Origin: Macrostomum lignano
Taxonomy: Eukaryota
DNA: 64,000 nucleotides
Assembly: GCA_002269645.1 (NCBI GenBank)
Contig: NIVC01000337.1
Span: 743,207 to 807,206 of the forward strand
Reading direction: 5' to 3'
Both the position numbers and the translations under genes were made by a program. Below the pieces are notes generated by a model. It did no database searches. It saw only the letters and a list, made by a program, of their open reading frames with translations, and had not been told where the DNA came from. Of the stretch, positions 47 through 62,529 are shown one piece after another. The stretch's first letter is position 1. Each line of letters opens with the position of its first letter.

Positions 47-2369
47 CTAGACGTCCGCCGCCTTGGACTGCCTGGCGTGGCACAGACGCAGCACGGCGTA
101 GACAATGCCGATGGCCACACCGATAGCGAACAGGCAGCCAATAACAATGGCCCAGGCCCAAGCGCCCGACGAGAAAATGGAGAACTTCGGCACCTTGTAG
201 AATTCGGCCGCACCGCCGGCCGGCATAAAGCAGGCGTAGCTTCGCTTAGCGCTGCACTTGTCCATGACGATGAACCTAAACAGGTACAGTATGTTCGTGA
301 TGAAGAAGGCGCAGCGCTCCTCTAGCTGGCAGTTGCGATTGTTGCCAAGGCGGGAGCTCTGACAGCCAATCAGATCGGGCCTGGCGATGGTTAAGAAATA
401 ATTATTCAAGCCTTCTTGCAGCAGCAGCAGGGAGGGGGCTTTTTTGAGTCTGATTTAGTTAGTGAGCTCAGTTACTTTTGCGTCACTCTTGAGTAGCTTC
501 AGTCATTATTGAGTAGACTCAATCCCTCTTGAGTAGCCTCAGTCACTCTTGAGTAGCTTTAGTCCCTCTTGAATGGCATCAGTTCATATTGAGTAGCCCC
601 AGTCACTCCTGAGTAACCTCAGTTAATCTTGATTAGCTTTAGTCACTCCTTAGTAGCCTCAGTCACTCCTGAGTAGCCTCAGTCACTCTTGAGTAGCCTC
701 AGTCACTCCTGAGTAGCCTCAGTCACTCCTGAGTAGCCTCAGTCACTCTTGAGTAGCCTCAGTCACTCCTGAGTAGCCTCAGTCACTCCTGAGTAGCCTC
801 AGTCACTCTTGAGTAGCCTCAGTCACTCCTGAGTAGCCTCAGTCACTCCTGAGTAGCCTCAGTCACTCTTGAGTAGCCTCAGTCACTCCTGAGTAGCCTC
901 AGTCACTCCTGAGTAGCCTCAGTCACTCCTGAGTAGCCTCAGTCACTCCTGAGTAGCCTCAGTCACTCCTGAGTAGCCTCAGTCACTCCTGAGTAGCCTC
1001 AGTCACTCCTGAGTAGCCTCAGTCACTCCTGAGTAGCCTCAGTCACTCTTGAGTAGCCTCAGTCACTCTTGAGTAGCCTCAGTCACTCTTGAGTAGCCTC
1101 AGTTACTCTTGAGTAGCCTCAGTCACTCTTGAGTAGCCTCAGTTACTCTTGAGTAGCCTCAGTCACTCTTGAGTCAACCCAAAGTCATTCTCATAGAGCT
1201 CACTCATAGAACTGCGAGCCATCTAGCCAATAATAATAGAACTGGCCAGCGCTGGTGTAGTCCGTCAGGCCAATCCAGTTGTCCTTGGTCAGCTGGCCAG
1301 GCAGCTGCCTGTACAGCTCGGTGATGGTCTCGATGCCGGGCAGGCCAGGCGGCAGATGCAGCAGGTTGGCCCGCATAGCAACGCAGGCGGTCTGCGAGTC
1401 ATCAAAGCTCAGAAGCGGGCCAGCCGAGCCGGCGTTGCCAAAGCAGTAGCCGCCGTAGGGCCGCCAGTCTGGCGGGCAGCCGCTGAACTGGCGCACCCGG
1501 AGGATGACGCCGACACCGGTGGTGGAAGAGGCGTCGGCAGCGGCGGCAGCGACAAAGGCGACAGTAACAGTTGGCCGCGAAGTGGTGAGGGCCATGTCGT
1601 GACCAGGCGGGGAGCCGCCCATGGGAACGGTGAGCAGGTTGTGCTGCTCCGACCAGACAGACAGATTAGCCGTCGGCATGGAGACGTTTAGTATCTGGGT
1701 AGGAAGCAAAGCCCGGGCGGGGAGAACACGAATTGGATACTTGCTACTCATAAGTAATAAGAAATGGGAAAACGCAAATAAAATACCAACATCTCTACTC
1801 CACCAAGAACTCCATTGTTGACAGATTTCTCAAATTTGACAATTAATACAAGTCTTAGTGGTTGGAGCGTTGGACTCGCGACTGAAAGGACTGGGGTTCG
1901 ATTCCCAACCCCAACTGGAACAATTTGTGTCCATGAGCAAGACGCTTGACTCTACATTGCTTCAATTCACCCAGCTGTAAAATGGGTGCCAGCATTAGCT
2001 GGGGTAATTGAGGGTGTGTGTGGCGACCCCCCCCCCCTAGTCCTGGGACTGAACAGCCGTACGCAGCCTTCAGGTGCACCGCACATTAATAACTGGGCAG
2101 AGGTCGCTACATGCACGACTCACCTGGACAAAGTAGAGCGCCCCGGGATTCTGTGACACCGCGTGAAACGAGCACCTGTCACCTGGCCGATACCTGTCTG
2201 AGCCAGCCGGCCTGGTGTGCACATAGAAATCCGACTGCCTGATGTAATCCCGGCCGGGGGTGTCGCAGTAAAAGCTCGCCGGAGGTGGCGCCAGCGTCAG
2301 CTGAGGTTGCGCCGGCTGCAGCAGCGGCAGCAGCAACGCCGCCAGGCAAGTTAAAGATGCGGAGTTGGT
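47..2369 (-). CDS. CUB + C-type lectin-like + TM receptor, paralog A (5' ATG not present in the exon)
   Basis: Exons 2369-2124, 1694-1204, 380-47 with GT-AG junctions of matching phase (0, 2); 1071 nt. Signal-peptide-like TNSASLTCLAALLLPLL, CUB-like YCD...YRPGDRCSF, CTLD CPPDW..GYCF..AQ/C..WIGLTD..YYWLDG, TM WAWAIVIGCLFAIGVAIGIVYAVL, tail ending KAADV. Aligns by eye to the paralog at 3853-5911. Confidence 0.8.
470..1175. repeat. Intronic minisatellite, 20-bp unit GAGTAGCCTCAGTCACTC(C/T)T
   Basis: About 35 tandem copies, degenerate at the left edge; fills intron 1203-381. Confidence 0.97.
1853..2079 (+). mobile_element. tRNA-derived SINE with CORE-like central domain, copy 1
   Basis: A-box-like TAGTGGTTGGAGCG, B-box GGTTCGATTCC, then TGTGTCC..GCAAGAC..CCCAGCTGTAAAATGGG. 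A second copy lies inverted at 23783-23999 and a decayed third at 40380-40483. Confidence 0.8.
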
Positions 2370-2395
2370 CTGAAGCAATTATTTAGATTATTGTA
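2370..2395 (-). promoter_or_regulatory. 3' splice acceptor (candidate trans-splice site) of paralog A
   Basis: Minus strand AATAATCTAAATAATTGCTTCAG|ACC, with an in-frame TAA just upstream and no ATG in the following exon. Confidence 0.55.
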
Positions 2396-2402
2396 GCACT
2401 GA

Positions 2403-2910
2403 GCGTACATTGGGGTTGAGGCTGGTGGGAACCGAGTGTACATTGGGGTTGAGGCTGGTGGGAACCGAGTGTACATTGGGGTTGAGGCTGGTGGGAACTG
2501 AGTGTACATTGGGGTTGAGGCTGGTGGGAACCGAGTGTACATTGGGGTTGAGGCTGGTGGGAACCGAGTGTACATTGGGGTTGAGGCTGGTGGGAACCGA
2601 GTGTACATTGGGGTTGAGGCTGGTGGGAACCGAGTGTACATTGGGGTTGAGGCTGGTGGGAACCGAGTGTACATTGGGGTTGAGGCTGGTGGGAACCGAG
2701 TGTACATTGGGGTTGAGGCTGGTGGGAACCGAGTGTACATTGGGGTTGAGGCTGGTGGGAACCGAGTGTACATTGGGGTTGAGGCTGATGGGAACCGAGT
2801 GTACATTGGGGTTGAGGCTGGTGGGAACCGAGTGTACATTGGGGTTGAGGCTGATGGGAACCGAGTGTACATTGGGGTTGAGGCTGGCGGGAACCGAGTG
2901 TACATTTGGC
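2403..2910. repeat. Minisatellite, 33-bp unit GTGTACATTGGGGTTGAGGCTGGTGGGAACCGA
   Basis: About 15 near-identical copies. Confidence 0.97.
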
Positions 2911-3227
2911 TGAAACGAGTATATTATGCTAAACTTTAGGGCCAGGTCGAGAGACGAATACAGGAACACATTTTGGGGAATTCAGAGTTTTTATTTCATT
3001 TCTGCTCGTCAAAGAACTCATTTCGAGATAAACAGTTATAAAAAGCGCGGGGTGGAAGTTTATAGCTAAAAAATTGGAATGCAGGCACAAAATCAAAAAT
3101 CGGCACTCTTAAAATTGATCACAGAAAATAAAACAGATAAATAACAAGTAAGCACTGATTCTGAAATAAAAAACAATGTAGCACTTAATTATATAATAAT
3201 ACTATAACAACTGCGATAAGTGGTTGG

Positions 3228-3650
3228 GTGGGGTCAGTCGAGTGTACATTGGGGTGAGTGGGGTCGAGAGAGTGTACATTGGGGTGAGTGGGGTCAGTCG
3301 AGTGTACATTGGGGTGAGTGGGGTCAGGAGAGTGTACATTGGGGTGAGTGGGGTCAGTCGAGTGTACATTGGGGTGAGTGGGGTCAGTCGAGTGTACATT
3401 GGGGTGAGTGGGGGCAGGAGAGTGTACATTGGGGTGAGTGGGGTCAGGAGAGTGTACATTGGGGTGAGTGGGGTCAGTCGAGTGTACATTGGGGTGAGTG
3501 GGGGCAGGAGAGTGTACATTGGGGTGAGTGGGGGCAGGAGAGTGTACATTGGGGTGAGTGGGGTCAGGAGAGTGTACATTGGGGTGAGTGGGGTCAGGAG
3601 AGTGTACATTGGGGTAAGGTCAAACGAGTGTACATTGGGGTGAGTTGGTG
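3228..3650. repeat. Minisatellite, 30-bp unit GTGTACATTGGGGTGAGTGGGGTCAG(TC/GA)GA
   Basis: About 14 copies; shares GTGTACATTGGGGT with the 33-bp array. Confidence 0.97.
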
Positions 3651-3852
3651 ATCTCATCAGTAAGTGTAAATAGGGTAAATGAGGTACTGAATAAGTTTCT
3701 CACTTAGAGAGAAAATGATTGGAATGCTAAAATAACGAACGAAAGACCACGCCAGCATTGAAAATGACCCCAATGATAAGCTAAACATTAGTAGACGCAA
3801 CAGCTTTTATAATTGTACAGAATTTCACAGATTTTATTACAGCTCTAATAAT

Positions 3853-4552
3853 CTAAACATCGGCACTGGCACTGGTAAAATTGCCAGGCGTGTAAGGCGG
3901 CGGCGGCAGCTGGTGCAGAGGCGGGAGGGCAGCAGACTGGTTATTCGCCTCTGGTGTGTAAGGAGGCGGCGGCGGCGGCTGCAGCCTGGGCTGGGCTGCT
4001 CTCAGCTGATACAATTGACGAGTCTGAGCATTGGGCGGCTTCACACCGGCGCAGTAGCGCACAGCCAGGCAGATGGCGGCGGTCAGCAGGCCGACAACCA
4101 GACAGGCGGACAGCACAGCAATCCACAGCCACATGACGGTTGGAGTGGCCTCGCCGCTGAAGCTGGTAGCGTTCGGCAGGGCGCCGGTCGGGACCCGGTC
4201 GAACCGGTCCGTGCCGCCGATCGGCATGGCGCACACGAACGGCCGGGCGGCTGAGCAGGCCGACATGAGCAGCGGGCGGCTGCTGCTGCTGCTGGACCAG
4301 GACATCAGGCCGCAGCGCTCCGAAGCCCGGCAGTCCCGATAAGCTGAGCTGCCGGATGAGCAGCCGATTTCTGAGTGCCTGAATTGTTTGAGTTAGCGGG
4401 GGCGAATTCGCTCTTGGAATATTTGCTAACAGGATTGTTAGATGCTCTTATCTTTTGCTTGCCTGCCTTAGTTTCCGCTTGAGGTAGGGTAGATCTTAAT
4501 GTTTTCCTGTCTACGCCTATCTTAGTAGTGTCTTAGTGTTTTGGGTCAGTCC

Positions 4553-4604
<52 letters not shown>

Positions 4605-4815
4605 TAGTGTCTTAGTGTTTCAGTGTCTGTCTGTCTGTCTGTCTGTCTGTCCTAGTGTCTGTGTGTTTCAGTGTCTGTCTGTCTGTCTGTCTTAGTGTCT
4701 TAGTGTTTCAGTGTCTGTCTGTCTGTCTGTCTGTCTTAGTGTCTGTGTGTTTCAGTGTCTGTCTGTCTGTCTGTCTTAGTGTTTCAGTGTCTGTCTGTCG
4801 GTCTTAGTGTTTGTT

Positions 4816-4866
<51 letters not shown>

Positions 4867-4885
4867 GTATCTGTCTGTCTGTGTA

Positions 4886-4940
<55 letters not shown>

Positions 4941-4943
4941 GTC

Positions 4944-4977
<34 letters not shown>

Positions 4978-5031
4978 GGTCTGTCTGACCGCTTTAGTGT
5001 CTGTCTGTACTACAGTCTCGCCACCACTCAC

Positions 5032-5102
<71 letters not shown>

Positions 5103-5911
5103 GTCTGTCTGTCTGTCTGTCTGTCTGTCGGTCTGTCTGACCGCTTTAGTGTCTGTCTGTACTACAGTCTCGCCACCACTCACTCTCCGAAGCGGCCCTT
5201 GTCCAGCCAGTAGTAGGCGAAGCGGCCCCAGTCGGTGGCATCCGTCAAGCCAATCCAGGCCTTGGAGACGCCCAGGCCGCGGCTCCAGCCGGCCAGCCGC
5301 TGTCGCACATTCTCAATGCCAGCCCCGGCCTGCACGCCGTAGGCCAGCGTCAGCAGGTTGGACCGCATAGAGTTGCAGGCCAACTGGGCGTTGGCAAAGG
5401 ACAGCCGCGCTGGCAGCTCGCCGTCAGCAGTGGTGCCGTAGCAAGCGTTGGACAGCTCCACCCAGCCGGGCGGGCAGTGCAGGAACGATCGGACCAGGAC
5501 GGTCAGGCCGGGCTTGGCCAGTGCACTGGCTGACACGGACAGCCGCAGACTGAGCTGTCCAGCAGGTGTCACCAAGCTGGTGGCGTGAGTTGGCAGCAGC
5601 GGCGACGCGTTTAGCAGCTGGCGGGAGCCGGAGGCCAGGCTGAGGCTGGCTCCGACATCGAGACCGCCGTTGGAGTCGTCCAGGCGAACGAACAGCAGGC
5701 TGCCCGGCAGCGAGCGGACCCGGAATTCGCAGTGCGAGCCGGGTCGGTAGGAATGCGCGGACTGGTTGTGGGTCACCAGCTGCACGGCCGGACCGGCCAG
5801 GATGTTCAAGCGGTTGGCGCTGTCGCAGTAGAAGGTGCCGCTGCCGGTCGGAGGGGAGCCGCTGACCACCGCAAGCAGCGTCAGCGCCAGTAAGCAGCAA
5901 TGCGGCGGCAT
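3853..5911 (-). CDS. CUB + C-type lectin-like + TM receptor, paralog B, with PPxY tail
   Basis: Exons 5911-5184 and 4378-3853 (phase 2, GA|GTGAGT ... TTCAG|G); 417 aa. Signal peptide [25 protein letters not shown] ([30 protein letters not shown]), [26 protein letters not shown], two PPPY motifs, ends SASADV. Confidence 0.85.
4550..5165. repeat. (GTCT)n microsatellite in the intron of paralog B
   Basis: Interrupted tetranucleotide array. Confidence 0.97.
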
Positions 5912-6021
5912 GCTCTTAGGAGAGGCAATGAATAAATGACTGCTGAAGCCCATGAATAGTCGAGTCAGTGATTGTGAAAATATTCTGCTAAACTAATGCT
6001 ACCAGTGCATTGCTAATGGAT

Positions 6022-37401: not shown

Positions 37402-38755
37402 CTTCGCCTGTCTGGAAAGTCGTGAGAATGTGTCAGTCAAGCAAGAAAGCAGCAAGCTGATGACATGGCACACATAAAATTTCAATAATAGACTTATAGA
37501 TGTATATGGTGAAAATTCTTGTTATTCTAGCAGCAAAATTGGGGGCAGGGGCGAGCTCAGCATAAAGTGCTCAATAACCAATGCAACGCGGTGATCAAGC
37601 TTGAAAAATCTAATAGCGAGTTCGTCAAAATGGAAGATTTCCAGGCTTATGCCTACGCTAGATACCGTCTTGGAATCTCTGCTATTAGTTGTTATGACGA
37701 ACTACTTAAAGTTTATGGAGATGCCGCACCAGGTCATTCAACGGTTTACAGATGGTACTCAAAGTTCCGTGATGAAGCATTTCCCCTGGCCTCAGCTCCT
37801 CGGACTGGCCGGCCACGGTCAACAAGGACAACGGAACTGATCAAAACCTGCCGAGCTCTCGTTGAAGAGGATTCAAAAGTTAGTGTCCGAGACCTCGCCG
37901 ACTTTTTGGAAGTTGGTAAAACAACAGTGCACGAAATTTTGATTAAGGATTTGCACCTTCGAAACGTTTCTGCTATCTGGGTTCCTCATGCTCTATCTGA
38001 GGAGAACAAGACTGCTCGCATCAATTGTGCCAAGTAAATCCGCAGGCTTTTTTACAACAAGGGGGTGGAAAACTTTTGCGACAAGTACGTGGTGGAAGAT
38101 GAGACGTGGGTGTACCTGAACAACACTGGCACAAAGCAAAACAACAGGTGCTGGCTTGGCCAATAGGGATCATCGGCCCCAGGTTGTCAGGCACTCGGTC
38201 GGGAATGCAAAGACAATGCTTCTGGTTGCTTTCACTCCAAGCAAGCGCTTCTCCATTAAATCCACAGCCCCGAAGCAAACTGTTGATGCAGATGGCATAG
38301 TTGAGTTCATTCAGCACACGGGAGACCTATGGCGTACTCTGAGGTCAAAGCCAATTCACCTGTCGGATGTTCTTTGGCAGTGGGACAATGCGCGACCTCA
38401 CGTAGCTCATTCTGTGCAGCAGTACATTGGAGTCCCGTGGAGTTCAGCTGGTGTTTCAGAGTCCTTACAGCCCAGACTTCAATCTGTGCGACCGTTTTTT
38501 GTTCAGTTGGATGAAGAATGATTTCTCCAGGTGAGTATTCAGCGACCACAATGAAGTTCGAGAAGCTGCGTTGCAGTGGGCAAGAGGCCTTGACGAAGAT
38601 TGCTTAAAAAGAGAGGTTCAGCGACTTGTTGACCATTGCCAAGCTGTAATCAATGCAAGGGGAGATTACATTACCAACTAGTGCTGTTATCGTGTTTTCT
38701 GATAGTTCTGACTGGTTTTTTAAATACATTCTCACGACTTTCCGGACAGCCGAAG
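37402..38755 (+). mobile_element. Mariner (D34D) transposon, full length but defective, 1354 bp
   Basis: About 30-bp TIRs CTTCG(C/G)CTGTC(T/C)GGAAAGTCGTGAGAATG, flanked by TA on both sides; encloses a transposase pseudogene. Confidence 0.92.
37630..38681 (+). pseudogene. Mariner transposase pseudogene
   Basis: HTH ..STVYRWYSKF..RTGRP, WVPHAL, VEDETW, WDNARPH, SPYSPDFNLCDRFLF (34 residues between the second and third D after frame correction). Stops at 38035, 38164 and near 38532; frameshifts near 38170 and 38430. Confidence 0.9.
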
Positions 38756-61939: not shown

Positions 61940-62467
61940 TCAAGCAGTGCTCAGCTGAGCATGCCTCGCCAGCAGGCGGTGATAGAGCTCGACTCGCTTG
62001 ACCTCGGCAATGAGCAGCAGAGCCTGGCTGTACCGGTCAGCGCTGCCGTCGCCGCCTCCGCCGCCTCCCAGCATGAACTCCCTCAGCCAGCGCAGGTGGT
62101 CCGCGTGGTAAGCCTTGAACAGCCTCTGATCGTTGGCCTGCCGCAGTGTGTTGAAGTCGGGCCGATAGAAGTACACGCCGAGCAGGATCATCGCGCCCAC
62201 GCCCAGCCGGCCGGAGAACACCACCTGCAGCTGCTCGTACAGGCGGGTCATCGAACTCACCAGGGCTACCACGTCTGAGGCAGCCAGCAGCGGGCGCTCG
62301 CCGATGATCAGATCGCTGAACAGGCCGGCAACTAACTGGGACAGCGCTTGTCTGGCCTCTGCCGGCCGAGAGCCGCCCGCGATTGCCGCGGCGGCGGTGA
62401 CCATCTGGCCGCTGAGCCGCTGGTAGTTCAGCGAGCGCATCAGAGCGCACAGGCCGCCGAGTTTCTC
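61940..62467 (-). CDS. Terminal exon of a nuclear-receptor ligand-binding-domain-like protein
   Basis: Acceptor CTTGCAG|GAG at 62467, GC-rich codon use. ILLGVYFYRPDFNTL..LFKAYHADHLRWLREFM..DRYSQALLLIAEVKRVELYH matches the LBD helix 8-11 pattern (LL.AI.LF.PD..L; Y...L..Y; RF..LL..L..LR). Upstream exons were not found in the window. Confidence 0.6.
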   Translation of the reverse strand, partial: EKLGGLCALMRSLNYQRLSGQMVTAAAAIAGGSRPAEARQALSQLVAGLFSDLIIGERPLLAASDVVALVSSMTRLYEQLQVVFSGRLGVGAMILLGVYFYRPDFNTLRQANDQRLFKAYHADHLRWLREFMLGGGGGGDGSADRYSQALLLIAEVKRVELYHRLLARHAQLSTA

Positions 62468-62529
62468 CTGCAAGTTTTTGGTCTTTCTTGAAGCTTTTGA
62501 TTATGCGTCTCTATTAGGAGTCGATTGCG

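What the first reader, a model, noticed from the sequence alone, without database searches (positions are those of the whole stretch)
2124..2395. Signal-peptide exon with no ATG, in frame with a 3' splice site: start codon may come from a spliced leader
Seen: the first exon of paralog A begins TTGCTTCAG|ACC AAC TCC (T-N-S-A-S-L-T-C-L-A-A-L-L-L-P-L-L). There is an in-frame TAA just upstream and no Met until mid-CUB in the next exon; the track's start at 2378 is a TTG. Established: flatworm spliced leaders end in AUG, and that AUG can initiate translation. Inference: SL-AUG joined to this phase-0 acceptor gives MTNSASLTCLAALLLPLL, a complete signal peptide. The gene would then depend on trans-splicing for its start codon, whereas paralog B carries its own ATG.
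Basis: partly seen in the sequence, partly recalled or inferred. Interest (0 to 1): 0.75.

Follow-up and report, generated by a model that had tools for sequence, protein, structure and literature searches.

The report
Spliced leader supplies gene's start codon
A membrane lectin-like gene of the flatworm Macrostomum lignano has no start codon of its own in this stretch of genome and very probably receives its AUG from the trans-spliced leader RNA, a mechanism already known in flatworms, so this is a good new example, not a new principle.

Summary
On the minus strand, exon 1 (2369..2124) starts right after TTGCTTCAG. An in-frame TAA lies 9 nt upstream. The exon encodes TNSASLTCLAALLLPLL… and has no ATG; the first in-frame ATG is in exon 2.

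The window is the end of contig NIVC01000337.1 of the Macrostomum lignano Mlig_3_7 assembly. The published M. lignano spliced leader (SL) is 35 nt long and ends in ATG. The acceptor fits the published SL-acceptor motif [T/C]TNCAG.

GenBank's RNA-seq-guided model (Mlig026538g2) is 5'-partial. It has no Met and no upstream exon. It shares its transcriptional-unit name with upstream paralog B (Mlig026538g1), which suggests an operon.

Two other assembled copies of the locus are identical over the 120 aligned bases around the junction, except that CAG is replaced by ATG. A neighbouring TMX2-like gene shows the same swap (TAG/ATG/TTG). The assembly was polished with RNA-seq reads, so I read these ATGs as imprints of SL-bearing mRNA. 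That is indirect RNA evidence for SL-AUG|ACCAAC.

No cis ATG exon with a consensus donor exists in the 1.48 kb upstream.

It is a new member of a known kind (Cheng et al. 2006, Schistosoma). No SL-containing read was inspected directly.

The parts
2370..2378 (-). Trans-splice acceptor TTGCTTCAG (AG at 2371-2370). The last six bases, CTTCAG, match the published M. lignano SL-acceptor motif [T/C]TNCAG.
   Evidence: motif from PMC8629364. In two other assembled copies the CAG reads ATG.
2379..2381 (-). In-frame TAA that closes the reading frame 9 nt upstream of exon 1, in the outron.
2124..2369 (-). Exon 1 of paralog A (GenBank Mlig026538g2). It is 246 nt, phase 0, and has no ATG in frame. It encodes the signal-peptide-like TNSASLTCLAALLLPLLQPAQPQ and the start of the N-terminal (CUB-like) domain.
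2122..2123 (-). GT of the exon 1 donor (CAG|GTGAGT).
1204..1694 (-). Exon 2 (acceptor ACCCAG|, donor GA|GTGAGC). It contains the first in-frame genomic ATG (1679-1677) and the start of the C-type lectin domain.
47..380 (-). Exon 3: the end of the lectin domain, the transmembrane helix, a short tail and stop TAG (49-47).
   Evidence: The spliced product equals GenBank PAA85330.1/PAA91121.1 from residue L6 onward.
2382..3832 (-). Outron / intercistronic region between the poly(A) signal of paralog B and the acceptor. It includes two minisatellites: 2401-2906 (33-mer x15.3) and 3228-3645 (30-mer x14.1). From B's stop to the acceptor is 1483 nt, or 559 nt after removing the repeats.
   Evidence: Operon criterion (<1 kb, repeat-adjusted) from PMC8629364.
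3833..3838 (-). AATAAA poly(A) signal of upstream paralog B, 15 nt after its stop codon (3855-3853).
3853..5953 (-). Paralog B (GenBank Mlig026538g1 in the second copy). Exon 1 runs to 5184 and the last exon is 4378-3853. Its own ATG is at 5911-5909, with a window-only ATG at 5953-5951. An acceptor-like CTTCAG ends at 5943.

Best explanation
Paralog A is the downstream gene of a two-gene transcriptional unit (B then A) in Macrostomum lignano. I infer that its mRNA is matured by SL trans-splicing at the acceptor TTGCTTCAG|ACC (window 2370/2369, minus strand). The 35-nt SL ends in AUG, so the mature mRNA would begin …UUAUUGCAUG|ACC AAC UCC….

The SL's only AUG is then the first AUG of the message. 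It is in frame and opens a 357-codon ORF, MTNSASLTCLAALLLPLLQPAQPQ…. The predicted product is a type-I membrane protein: signal peptide, CUB-like domain, C-type lectin domain, transmembrane helix.

Without the SL the message has no usable start. The next AUG is out of frame, and the next in-frame AUG removes the signal peptide and half of the first domain.

Shown: the sequence anatomy, the identity of the organism and its SL, the 5'-partial RNA-based gene model, the shared transcriptional-unit name, and the CAG/ATG discordance among assembled copies.

Inferred: that the ATG in the other copies comes from SL-bearing RNA-seq reads used for polishing, and that ribosomes initiate at the SL AUG.
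For: 1. Organism and SL. The hits are 100% identical M. lignano proteins, and the locus is NIVC01000337.1 of GCA_002269645.1. The SL is CGGTCTCTTACTGCGAAGACTCAATTTATTGCATG, the SL-acceptor motif is [T/C]TNCAG, and 30% of genes are SL trans-spliced (PMC8629364).

2. Precedent. The flatworm SL AUG is an established initiator (Cheng et al. 2006, cited in PMC12582326 and PMC9851317).

3. No public model has a start at this exon. Two ML2 models drop exon 1 and start at the internal Met (P0001, P0004). One fuses B to A exactly at this acceptor (P0002, …SASAD|TNSAS…). The RNA-seq-guided GenBank model PAA85330.1/PAA91121.1 is '5' partial', begins LTCLAALLL at 2354, and has no upstream exon. The exact sequences beginning MTNSAS… are absent from a 15-billion-protein collection.

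4. Operon context. B is Mlig026538g1 and A is Mlig026538g2. In this annotation, g1 and g2 of one prefix are genes cut from one transcriptional unit (Suppl. Fig. 5 of PMC5730564). B and A are only 34% identical, so sequence clustering cannot explain the shared prefix. The repeat-adjusted spacing is 559 nt, under the 1 kb criterion.

5. ATG at the junction in other copies. L002 (NIVC01000094.1) and L003 (NIVC01004156.1) are identical to the window over 120 nt around the junction, except that CAG reads ATG at -3 and -2. Between 2499 and 2124 these are the only differences between L001 and L002. L003 shares all three flanking SNP states with the window copy yet carries ATG, so the state is discordant with haplotype.

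6. The same swap in a second gene. It sits at the annotated 5' end of the neighbouring TMX2-like gene: TAG in L001, ATG in L002, TTG in L003.

7. A documented source for the artefact. The assembly was polished with Pilon using RNA-seq reads mapped by STAR (PMC5730564 methods). The only sequence that precedes both exons in mRNA and ends in ATG is the SL.

8. No good cis alternative. There are only 7 ATG…|GT phase-0 candidates in 2370-3852, and none has GT[A/G]AG.

9. Reading frame. In the SL+mRNA, the SL AUG is the first AUG and gives 357 aa. The next AUG is out of frame (35 aa). The next in-frame AUG gives 269 aa.

10. Family architecture. Family members P0022 and P0023, and paralog B, have M plus a 15-20 aa hydrophobic leader directly before the conserved xYC motif. 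This matches M+TNSAS…FYC.
Against: - No SL-containing read or cDNA was inspected. The RNA evidence is an inferred polishing imprint.
- The imprint covers only positions -3 and -2. Positions -4 and -5 keep the genomic TT, not the SL's GC. That needs reads trimmed of the SL up to the ATG, or a mapping limit of two mismatches or fewer. I could confirm neither.
- The GenBank transcript starts 13-15 nt downstream of the acceptor, not exactly at it, so the annotation pipeline did not evidently place an SL peak at 2369. For TMX2 the CDS does start exactly at the junction.
- L003 keeps three uncorrected 1-bp homopolymer deletions, so polishing there was uneven.
- The SL AUG context (U at -3) is not a strong Kozak context.
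- No SL RNA gene lies in the window. That is expected but uninformative.
- Expression level and the protein itself are unverified.
Confidence: 0.8

Rival explanations
1. The ATG seen in the other two assembled copies is real DNA. In this view the gene normally has its own genomic start codon (CTT ATG ACC…). The window copy is then an allele or duplicate in which ATG became CAG. It would be either a start-less, possibly dead copy, or one that switched to SL dependence.
For: Two of three assembled copies read ATG, and an ATG there gives exactly the same protein. Adjacent double differences do occur elsewhere between the copies: 22 among 245 substitutions, mostly inside tandem repeats.
Against: - The same AG-to-ATG swap at a second gene's annotated 5' end, with a TTG intermediate in the third copy, is very unlikely to arise naturally.
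- The ATG state is discordant with the flanking SNP haplotype.
- The ML2-based models, from an independent earlier assembly, never start at MTNSAS or MALPSL, and two of them use the position as an exon boundary (P0002, P0014).
- RNA-seq polishing is documented.
- GenBank still calls the CDS 5'-partial in the copies that read ATG.
Confidence: 0.08
2. A cis-spliced upstream exon supplies the ATG. It could be an unannotated first exon in 2370-3852, or a read-through fusion with paralog B, as in UniProt A0A1I8GG32 (donor GAT|GTTTAG at 3859/3858 joined to 2369).
For: One public model (P0002) makes exactly this fusion. Seven ATG…|GT phase-0 candidates exist upstream.
Against: - None of the seven has the GT[A/G]AG donor reported at 122,399 of 187,627 donor regions (about 65%).
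- The fusion donor GTTTAG is also non-consensus. The fusion would place a signal peptide after a transmembrane helix and a PPxY-motif tail.
- P0002 also starts at an internal Met of B and skips part of A, which is typical of an ab initio work-around.
- The RNA-seq-guided model has no upstream exon.
- A B-derived exon would end …GAT, not …ATG, so it could not produce the imprint seen in L002 and L003.
Confidence: 0.04
3. No Met is added. Translation starts at the exon 2 ATG (the 269-aa product of UniProt A0A1I8GJH2) or at a near-cognate codon such as TTG 2378. Alternatively, the gene is an untranslated pseudogene.
For: Two ML2 models start at MPTANLSV. TTG 2378 is in frame.
Against: - The 269-aa product lacks the signal peptide and about half of the first domain, although exon 1 is intact.
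- Between the copies, 1071 exonic bases differ at one position, and that difference is synonymous (identical protein).
- An out-of-frame AUG precedes the exon 2 AUG.
- TTG lies in the outron, in a poor context, 3 nt after a stop.
- All splice sites, the ORF and the domain cysteines are intact.
Confidence: 0.05

Closest known systems
Schistosoma mansoni mRNAs that use the SL 3'-terminal AUG as initiator methionine (Cheng, Cohen, Ndegwa & Davis, J Biol Chem 2006; summarised in PMC9851317 and PMC12582326)
   Same: The flatworm SL ends in AUG. The acceptor is in phase 0 with the ORF. There is no genomic in-frame AUG upstream of conserved coding sequence. The SL AUG becomes the first AUG of the mRNA.
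   Different: This is a free-living, early-branching flatworm (Macrostomorpha), not a trematode. The donated Met heads a secretory signal peptide. Translation from the SL AUG has not been tested in this species. The papers I found and read for M. lignano (PMC8629364, PMC5730564, PMC10468722) note only that the SL ends in, or 'likely contains', ATG. They list no SL-AUG-dependent genes.
SL-resolved operons of M. lignano (Wudarski et al. 2017, PMC5730564; Ustyantsev & Berezikov 2021, PMC8629364) and, more generally, nematode operons
   Same: The two genes are on the same strand and share one transcriptional-unit name (g1, g2). The repeat-adjusted spacing is 559 nt. The downstream gene begins at a [T/C]TNCAG acceptor. 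Minisatellites inflate the spacer, as those authors describe.
   Different: The two cistrons are paralogs, a tandem duplicate pair. The raw spacer is 1.48 kb, so an internal promoter cannot be excluded. M. lignano uses one SL, not an SL1/SL2 division.
slORFs (ORFs created by start codons within SL sequences; slORFfinder, PMC9851317)
   Same: The start codon is supplied in trans by the leader.
   Different: Here the SL AUG does not create an alternative or extended ORF. It is the only way to translate the full, conserved protein.

Membership tests
SL-AUG-initiated flatworm mRNA (Cheng et al. 2006 type) | The organism's SL exon ends in AUG. | tested here: met
   The organism was identified as M. 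lignano. The published 35-nt SL ends …TTGCATG (PMC8629364). It has a single ATG, at positions 33-35.
SL-AUG-initiated flatworm mRNA (Cheng et al. 2006 type) | The first coding exon begins at a 3' splice site with no cis donor upstream, and the ORF is in phase 0 with that site. | tested here: met
   CTTCAG|ACC matches [T/C]TNCAG. The frame is open from 2369 and homologous to paralog B from residue 28. No GT[A/G]AG phase-0 ATG exon lies in 2370-3852.
SL-AUG-initiated flatworm mRNA (Cheng et al. 2006 type) | There is no genomic in-frame AUG between the upstream stop and the conserved coding sequence. | tested here: met
   TAA lies at 2381-2379. The first in-frame ATG is at 1679-1677 in exon 2.
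SL-AUG-initiated flatworm mRNA (Cheng et al. 2006 type) | The SL is physically joined to this exon in mRNA (SL-containing reads or cDNA). | tested here: inconclusive
   The evidence is indirect only. ATG replaces the acceptor CAG in two RNA-seq-polished assembly copies, and the same happens at a second gene. The GenBank model is 5'-partial and is g2 of a two-gene unit.
SL-AUG-initiated flatworm mRNA (Cheng et al. 2006 type) | Translation initiates at the SL AUG. | not testable with these tools
   This needs N-terminal proteomics, ribosome profiling or a reporter. By sequence, the SL AUG is the first AUG and the only productive one.
M. lignano operon (Ustyantsev & Berezikov 2021 criteria) | Adjacent same-strand genes, repeat-adjusted distance under 1 kb, downstream gene SL trans-spliced. 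| tested here: inconclusive
   Same strand: met. Distance of 1483 nt minus 924 nt of tandem repeats gives 559 nt: met. Shared transcriptional-unit prefix Mlig026538 g1/g2: met. The SL status of the downstream gene is only indirectly supported.
Secretory signal peptide | An N-terminal Met, a short n-region, a hydrophobic h-region of about 7-15 residues, and a polar c-region before the mature domain. | tested here: inconclusive
   M+TNSAS / LTCLAALLLPLL / QPAQPQ. The Kyte-Doolittle 9-residue window peaks at 2.76, against 2.94 for paralog B. Relatives P0022 and P0023 have the same layout. No dedicated signal-peptide predictor was available.
C-type lectin domain protein (Pfam PF00059) | A match to Lectin_C above the gathering score. 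| tested here: inconclusive
   Gene A scores 15.7 bits (cut-off 22.6) and B scores 18.5. Family members P0022 (28.5) and P0023 (24.1) pass. UniProt names the ML2 models 'C-type lectin domain-containing'.
CUB domain protein | A match to a CUB profile. | tested here: not met
   There is no Pfam CUB hit at E <= 0.1 for A, B, P0022 or P0023. The label 'CUB' rests only on UniProt's automatic name for A0A1I8GG32. I call the domain CUB-like.

The most novel reading that the evidence does not exclude
The CAG/ATG difference (and TAG/ATG/TTG in the neighbouring TMX2-like gene) is real DNA polymorphism among duplicated copies of the M. lignano genome. A trans-splice acceptor and a genome-encoded start codon would then interchange at exactly the same three bases without changing the protein. 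That would be a caught-in-the-act view of how genes gain or lose dependence on the spliced leader for their AUG.
Probability: 0.07. Interest if true: 0.75.

Novelty: new member of a known kind. Interest (0 to 1): 0.4.

Why it matters
For biology: in the papers I found and read, no M. lignano gene had been described as depending on the leader's AUG. M. lignano belongs to an early-branching flatworm lineage (Macrostomorpha), far from the trematodes where this was shown. Here the donated AUG heads a secretory signal peptide. Together with the TMX2-like neighbour, it suggests that SL-donated start codons are not rare in this model organism.

For annotation: genes of this kind are systematically mis-modelled. 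This one has been truncated at an internal Met, fused to its operon neighbour, or flagged 'partial'. Adding the SL AUG in silico at trans-splice sites would repair such models.

For the reference genome: if the imprint reading is right, the widely used Mlig_3_7 assembly contains SL-derived ATGs that overwrite genuine acceptor AGs in some copies. That creates false start codons and destroys splice signals. It matters to anyone designing promoters, guides or transgenes from this assembly.

Tried and rejected
- **SL in the window.** I searched the window for the SL sequence or an SL RNA gene, allowing up to 3 mismatches. Nothing was found. This is uninformative, because SL genes lie elsewhere in the genome.
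- **Exact-protein look-ups.** Look-ups failed for the UniProt models P0001 and P0002, for two mechanical ORFs, and for two guesses at the MND1-like gene. Only the GenBank partial proteins are indexed. P0003, P0016 and P0015 worked.
- **INTS11-like exon search.** A homology search with an INTS11-like exon, meant to reach more duplicated loci, returned no M. lignano protein.
- **More AG/ATG swaps.** I scanned the roughly 35 kb of paired sequence held (L001-L004). The only real cases are the gene A site and the TMX2 site found. Every other hit is a single A/T SNP or a tandem-repeat misalignment.
- **MBOAT-like gene.** The ATG 6 nt upstream of its partial CDS is identical in both copies held, so it says nothing.
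- **Literature.** 'Mlig026538' appears in no paper. A search combining spliced leader, Pilon and polishing returned 25 papers. None of the 10 titles and abstracts listed concerns SL imprints, and I opened none. Cheng et al. 2006 itself is not held, so I cite it through papers that summarise it.
- **Domains and RNA genes.** Pfam finds no CUB domain. ARAGORN finds no tRNA gene in the window.
- **Rejected ideas.** TTG 2378 as a start is only a mechanical ORF boundary, 3 nt after a stop and in the outron. The B-A fusion protein is topologically implausible, has a non-consensus donor, and would leave a …GAT imprint, not …ATG.
Full report
**What is in the sequence**

The gene lies on the minus strand. 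Reading that strand, a 33-bp minisatellite (2906-2401) is followed by …CTAAATAA TTG CTT CAG | ACC AAC TCC GCA TCT TTA ACT TGC CTG…. The key positions are:

| Feature | Window coordinates |
|---|---|
| In-frame TAA | 2381-2379 |
| TTG (mechanical ORF start) | 2378-2376 |
| AG of the acceptor | 2371-2370 |
| First exon base | 2369 |
| Exon 1 (246 nt, phase 0 at both ends), donor CAG\|GTGAGT | 2369-2124 |
| Exon 2 | 1694-1204 |
| Exon 3, stop TAG at 49-47 | 380-47 |

- The three exons splice into a 356-codon ORF without a Met.
- The 'track start' TTG is only the first NTG after the stop in a mechanical ORF list.
- The first in-frame ATG is at 1679-1677 in exon 2.
- Every factual element of the finding is therefore confirmed.
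- The bare pattern (motif, open frame, upstream stop, no ATG) occurs at 6 of 270 YTNCAG sites in the window. Only this one opens a frame with protein homology.

**What the gene is**

- The product is 34% identical (E = 3e-45) to the tandem upstream paralog B (5953..3853, same strand). Homology begins at residue 28 of A and residue 19 of B, counting B from its Met at 5911.
- Ahead of that point, both proteins have a short polar stretch and a hydrophobic core: LTCLAALLLPLL in A and [12 protein letters not shown] in B.
- The family is small. An all-against-all HMMER search of 1.84 billion representatives found 13 hits.
- The two best relatives, P0022 and P0023, begin M + 15-20 hydrophobic residues + QQxYC. 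They pass the Pfam gathering score for Lectin_C. A and B fall just below it.
- Pfam finds no CUB domain in any of them. 'CUB' is UniProt's automatic label for one model.
- The architecture is: signal peptide, CUB-like domain, C-type lectin domain, transmembrane helix, cytoplasmic tail. The tail is proline-rich with PPxY motifs in B and short in A.
- A signal peptide is thus expected exactly where exon 1 encodes one. Only the Met is missing.

**Organism and leader**

- The protein search returned 100%-identical Macrostomum lignano entries.
- An exact look-up placed the gene on NIVC01000337.1 of assembly GCA_002269645.1 (Mlig_3_7). The window is the last 64 kb of that contig.
- The M. lignano SL is a single 35-nt sequence, CGGTCTCTTACTGCGAAGACTCAATTTATTGCATG. 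About 30% of genes carry it, or 38.8% by another count.
- The top motif at SL acceptors is [T/C]TNCAG. Operons are defined by a repeat-adjusted spacing under 1 kb (PMC8629364; PMC5730564).
- CTTCAG|ACC fits the motif.
- That flatworm SLs end in AUG, and that this AUG can initiate translation, is established (Cheng et al. 2006). In S. mansoni it is in frame with 28% of trans-spliced transcripts, and more than 40 cDNAs need it (PMC9851317; PMC12582326).

**What the public gene models say**

- Two ML2-based UniProt models drop exon 1 and start at the exon 2 Met (P0001, P0004).
- A third model (P0002, A0A1I8GG32) fuses B's last exon to A exactly at 2369 (…SASAD|TNSAS…). It uses a non-consensus donor GAT|GTTTAG one codon before B's stop.
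- The RNA-seq-guided GenBank model (PAA85330.1/PAA91121.1, 'BOX15_Mlig026538g2, partial') begins LTCLAALLL at 2354. It has no Met and no upstream exon.
- Paralog B in the second copy is 'BOX15_Mlig026538g1, partial'.
- In this annotation, g1 and g2 under one prefix are genes cut out of a single transcriptional unit (Suppl. Fig. 5a of PMC5730564).
- B and A are far too different to share a prefix through the 95% clustering step. The RNA-seq assembly therefore joined them in one precursor.
- The spacer is 1483 nt, of which 924 nt are two minisatellites. That leaves 559 nt, within the published operon criterion.
- B has AATAAA 15 nt after its stop (3838-3833).

**The unexpected evidence: other assembled copies**

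The exact look-up returned two further copies: L002 (NIVC01000094.1) and later L003 (NIVC01004156.1).

- Over 120 nt centred on the junction, all three copies are identical except at positions -3 and -2. The window reads CAG; L002 and L003 read ATG.
- Between 2499 and 2124 these are the only differences between the window copy and L002. The exons differ at one synonymous site in 1071 nt.
- L003 shares the window's state at all three SNPs that distinguish L002 within the gene (2115, 1765, 278), yet it carries ATG.
- The same thing happens 7 kb away at a TMX2-like thioredoxin gene. Its GenBank CDS is again partial and starts (ALPSLRSLV…) exactly at the junction. The three preceding bases are TAG in L001, ATG in L002 and TTG in L003.
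- ML2-based models of that gene begin either at the junction without a Met (P0014) or at an internal Met (P0018-20). None begins MALPSL.
- The exact sequences MTNSAS… and MALPSL… are absent from the 15-billion-protein collection.

The simplest reading is that SL-bearing RNA-seq reads, which carry …ATG immediately 5' of each exon, out-voted the DNA reads at these two positions in some redundant copies. TTG would be a half-completed imprint.

A B-derived cis exon would have left …GAT, not …ATG.

**Caveats on the imprint**

- Only -3 and -2 are changed. Positions -4 and -5 keep the genomic TT, whereas the SL has GC.
- That requires reads trimmed of the SL up to the ATG, or end-to-end mapping with at most two mismatches. 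I could document neither.
- L003 also retains three 1-bp homopolymer deletions. Reads crossing those deletions may have mapped preferentially to the intact copies; I did not test this.
- The GenBank transcript of gene A begins 13-15 nt inside the exon, not at the acceptor.
- The alternative is that ATG is genuine DNA in two copies. I give it about 7-8%. It would still confirm the N-terminus M-TNSAS and leave the window copy dependent on the SL, or dead.

**Alternatives for the start**

- Between B's stop and the acceptor there are only seven ATG…|GT combinations in phase 0. None has the GT[A/G]AG found at 122,399 of 187,627 donor regions (about 65%).
- In the modelled SL-mRNA, the SL AUG is the first AUG and opens 357 codons. 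The next AUG is out of frame (35 codons). The next in-frame AUG yields a 269-aa protein without the signal peptide and without half of the first domain.
- TTG 2378 lies in the outron, 3 nt after a stop.

**Conclusion**

Paralog A is most likely the SL-trans-spliced downstream cistron of a B-A unit, and it takes its initiator AUG from the leader. Paralog B encodes its own ATG at 5911, which is conserved in L002. The extra ATG at 5953 is window-specific.

The mechanism is known from Schistosoma. This is therefore a new member of a known kind, in a distant free-living flatworm. In the M. lignano papers I found and read, no such gene had been pointed out. The likely polishing imprint in the reference assembly is a practical by-product worth reporting to its users.

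No step in this work touched anything that needed referral.

Noticed in passing
L002 9983-9985 and 16355-16357; L003 2365-2367 and 9998-10000 (window equivalent 2372-2370): In the public Mlig_3_7 assembly, some redundant copies carry ATG (or TTG) where another copy has a trans-splice acceptor CAG or TAG. The swap sits exactly at the annotated 5' ends of two genes. It is probably an artefact of Pilon polishing with RNA-seq reads that carry the SL's terminal ATG. It would create false start codons and erase real acceptors.
   Followed up: partly
L001 17045-18806 (outside the window, about 4.7 kb beyond its start on the same contig): A TMX2-like thioredoxin-domain gene (GenBank Mlig017034g2, 272 aa, 'partial') begins ALPSLRSLV… directly after an acceptor TTCTAG| whose TAG is an in-frame stop. 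It is a second candidate for a start codon donated by the SL AUG, this time in a broadly conserved gene.
   Followed up: partly
L001 20910-20925; L003 13588-13603: The COP9 signalosome subunit 4 gene has a genomic ATG (…ccaATGagcgctcag|cta…), but its GenBank CDS is 'partial' and starts downstream of that ATG. The in-frame CAG|CTA looks like an SL acceptor. If used, it would swap the genomic ATG for the SL AUG and shorten the protein by four residues.
   Followed up: no
window 5938-5953 (minus strand); L002 about 5470-5515: Paralog B's upstream ATG (5953) exists only in the window copy. L002 reads gacTTGCTTCAG|CAGTCA there, the same 9-mer as gene A's acceptor. If B is trans-spliced at this CTTCAG (exon starting at 5942), the SL AUG opens a 9-codon upstream ORF that ends 4 nt before B's own ATG (5911).
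   Followed up: no
UniProt models P0002 (A0A1I8GG32) and P0014, P0018-P0020 (A0A1I8JH41 and others): The ML2-based annotation fuses operon neighbours into chimeric proteins: paralog B with A, and the TMX2-like gene with COPS4. It also starts several models at internal Mets. These are the typical errors made when SL-resolved operons and SL-donated AUGs are ignored.
   Followed up: partly
L003 2368-4700 (window equivalents 2260, 2037, 1498): The third assembled copy of gene A has three 1-bp deletions relative to the window copy. At least two lie in homopolymer runs: a C run in exon 1 and a G run in intron 1. GenBank therefore annotates a 173-aa product that starts in the wrong frame (P0021). This looks like residual long-read error in a redundant contig, not a pseudogene.
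   Followed up: partly
window 62450-62490 (minus strand): Another ORF begins right after an acceptor-like cTTGCAG|GAG AAA CTC… in phase 0, with no ATG (mechanical TTG start at 62473). It could be an internal exon or another SL-AUG case.
   Followed up: no
window about 1860-2045 (intron 1 of gene A): This is a tRNA-derived SINE-like insertion: on the plus strand it contains …GGTTCGATTCCCAACCCC…, resembling a tRNA T-arm. It follows a run of 10 G (minus strand). ARAGORN calls no tRNA gene anywhere in the window.
   Followed up: no
window 37567-38521 (plus strand): Two adjacent ORFs encode what looks, by eye, like a broken mariner/Tc1-type transposase. It was not searched against any library.
   Followed up: no
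PMC8629364 (text): [quoted passage not shown] So at least one locus has the leader sequence written into the assembly upstream of a gene. This may be related to the imprint seen here.
   Followed up: no
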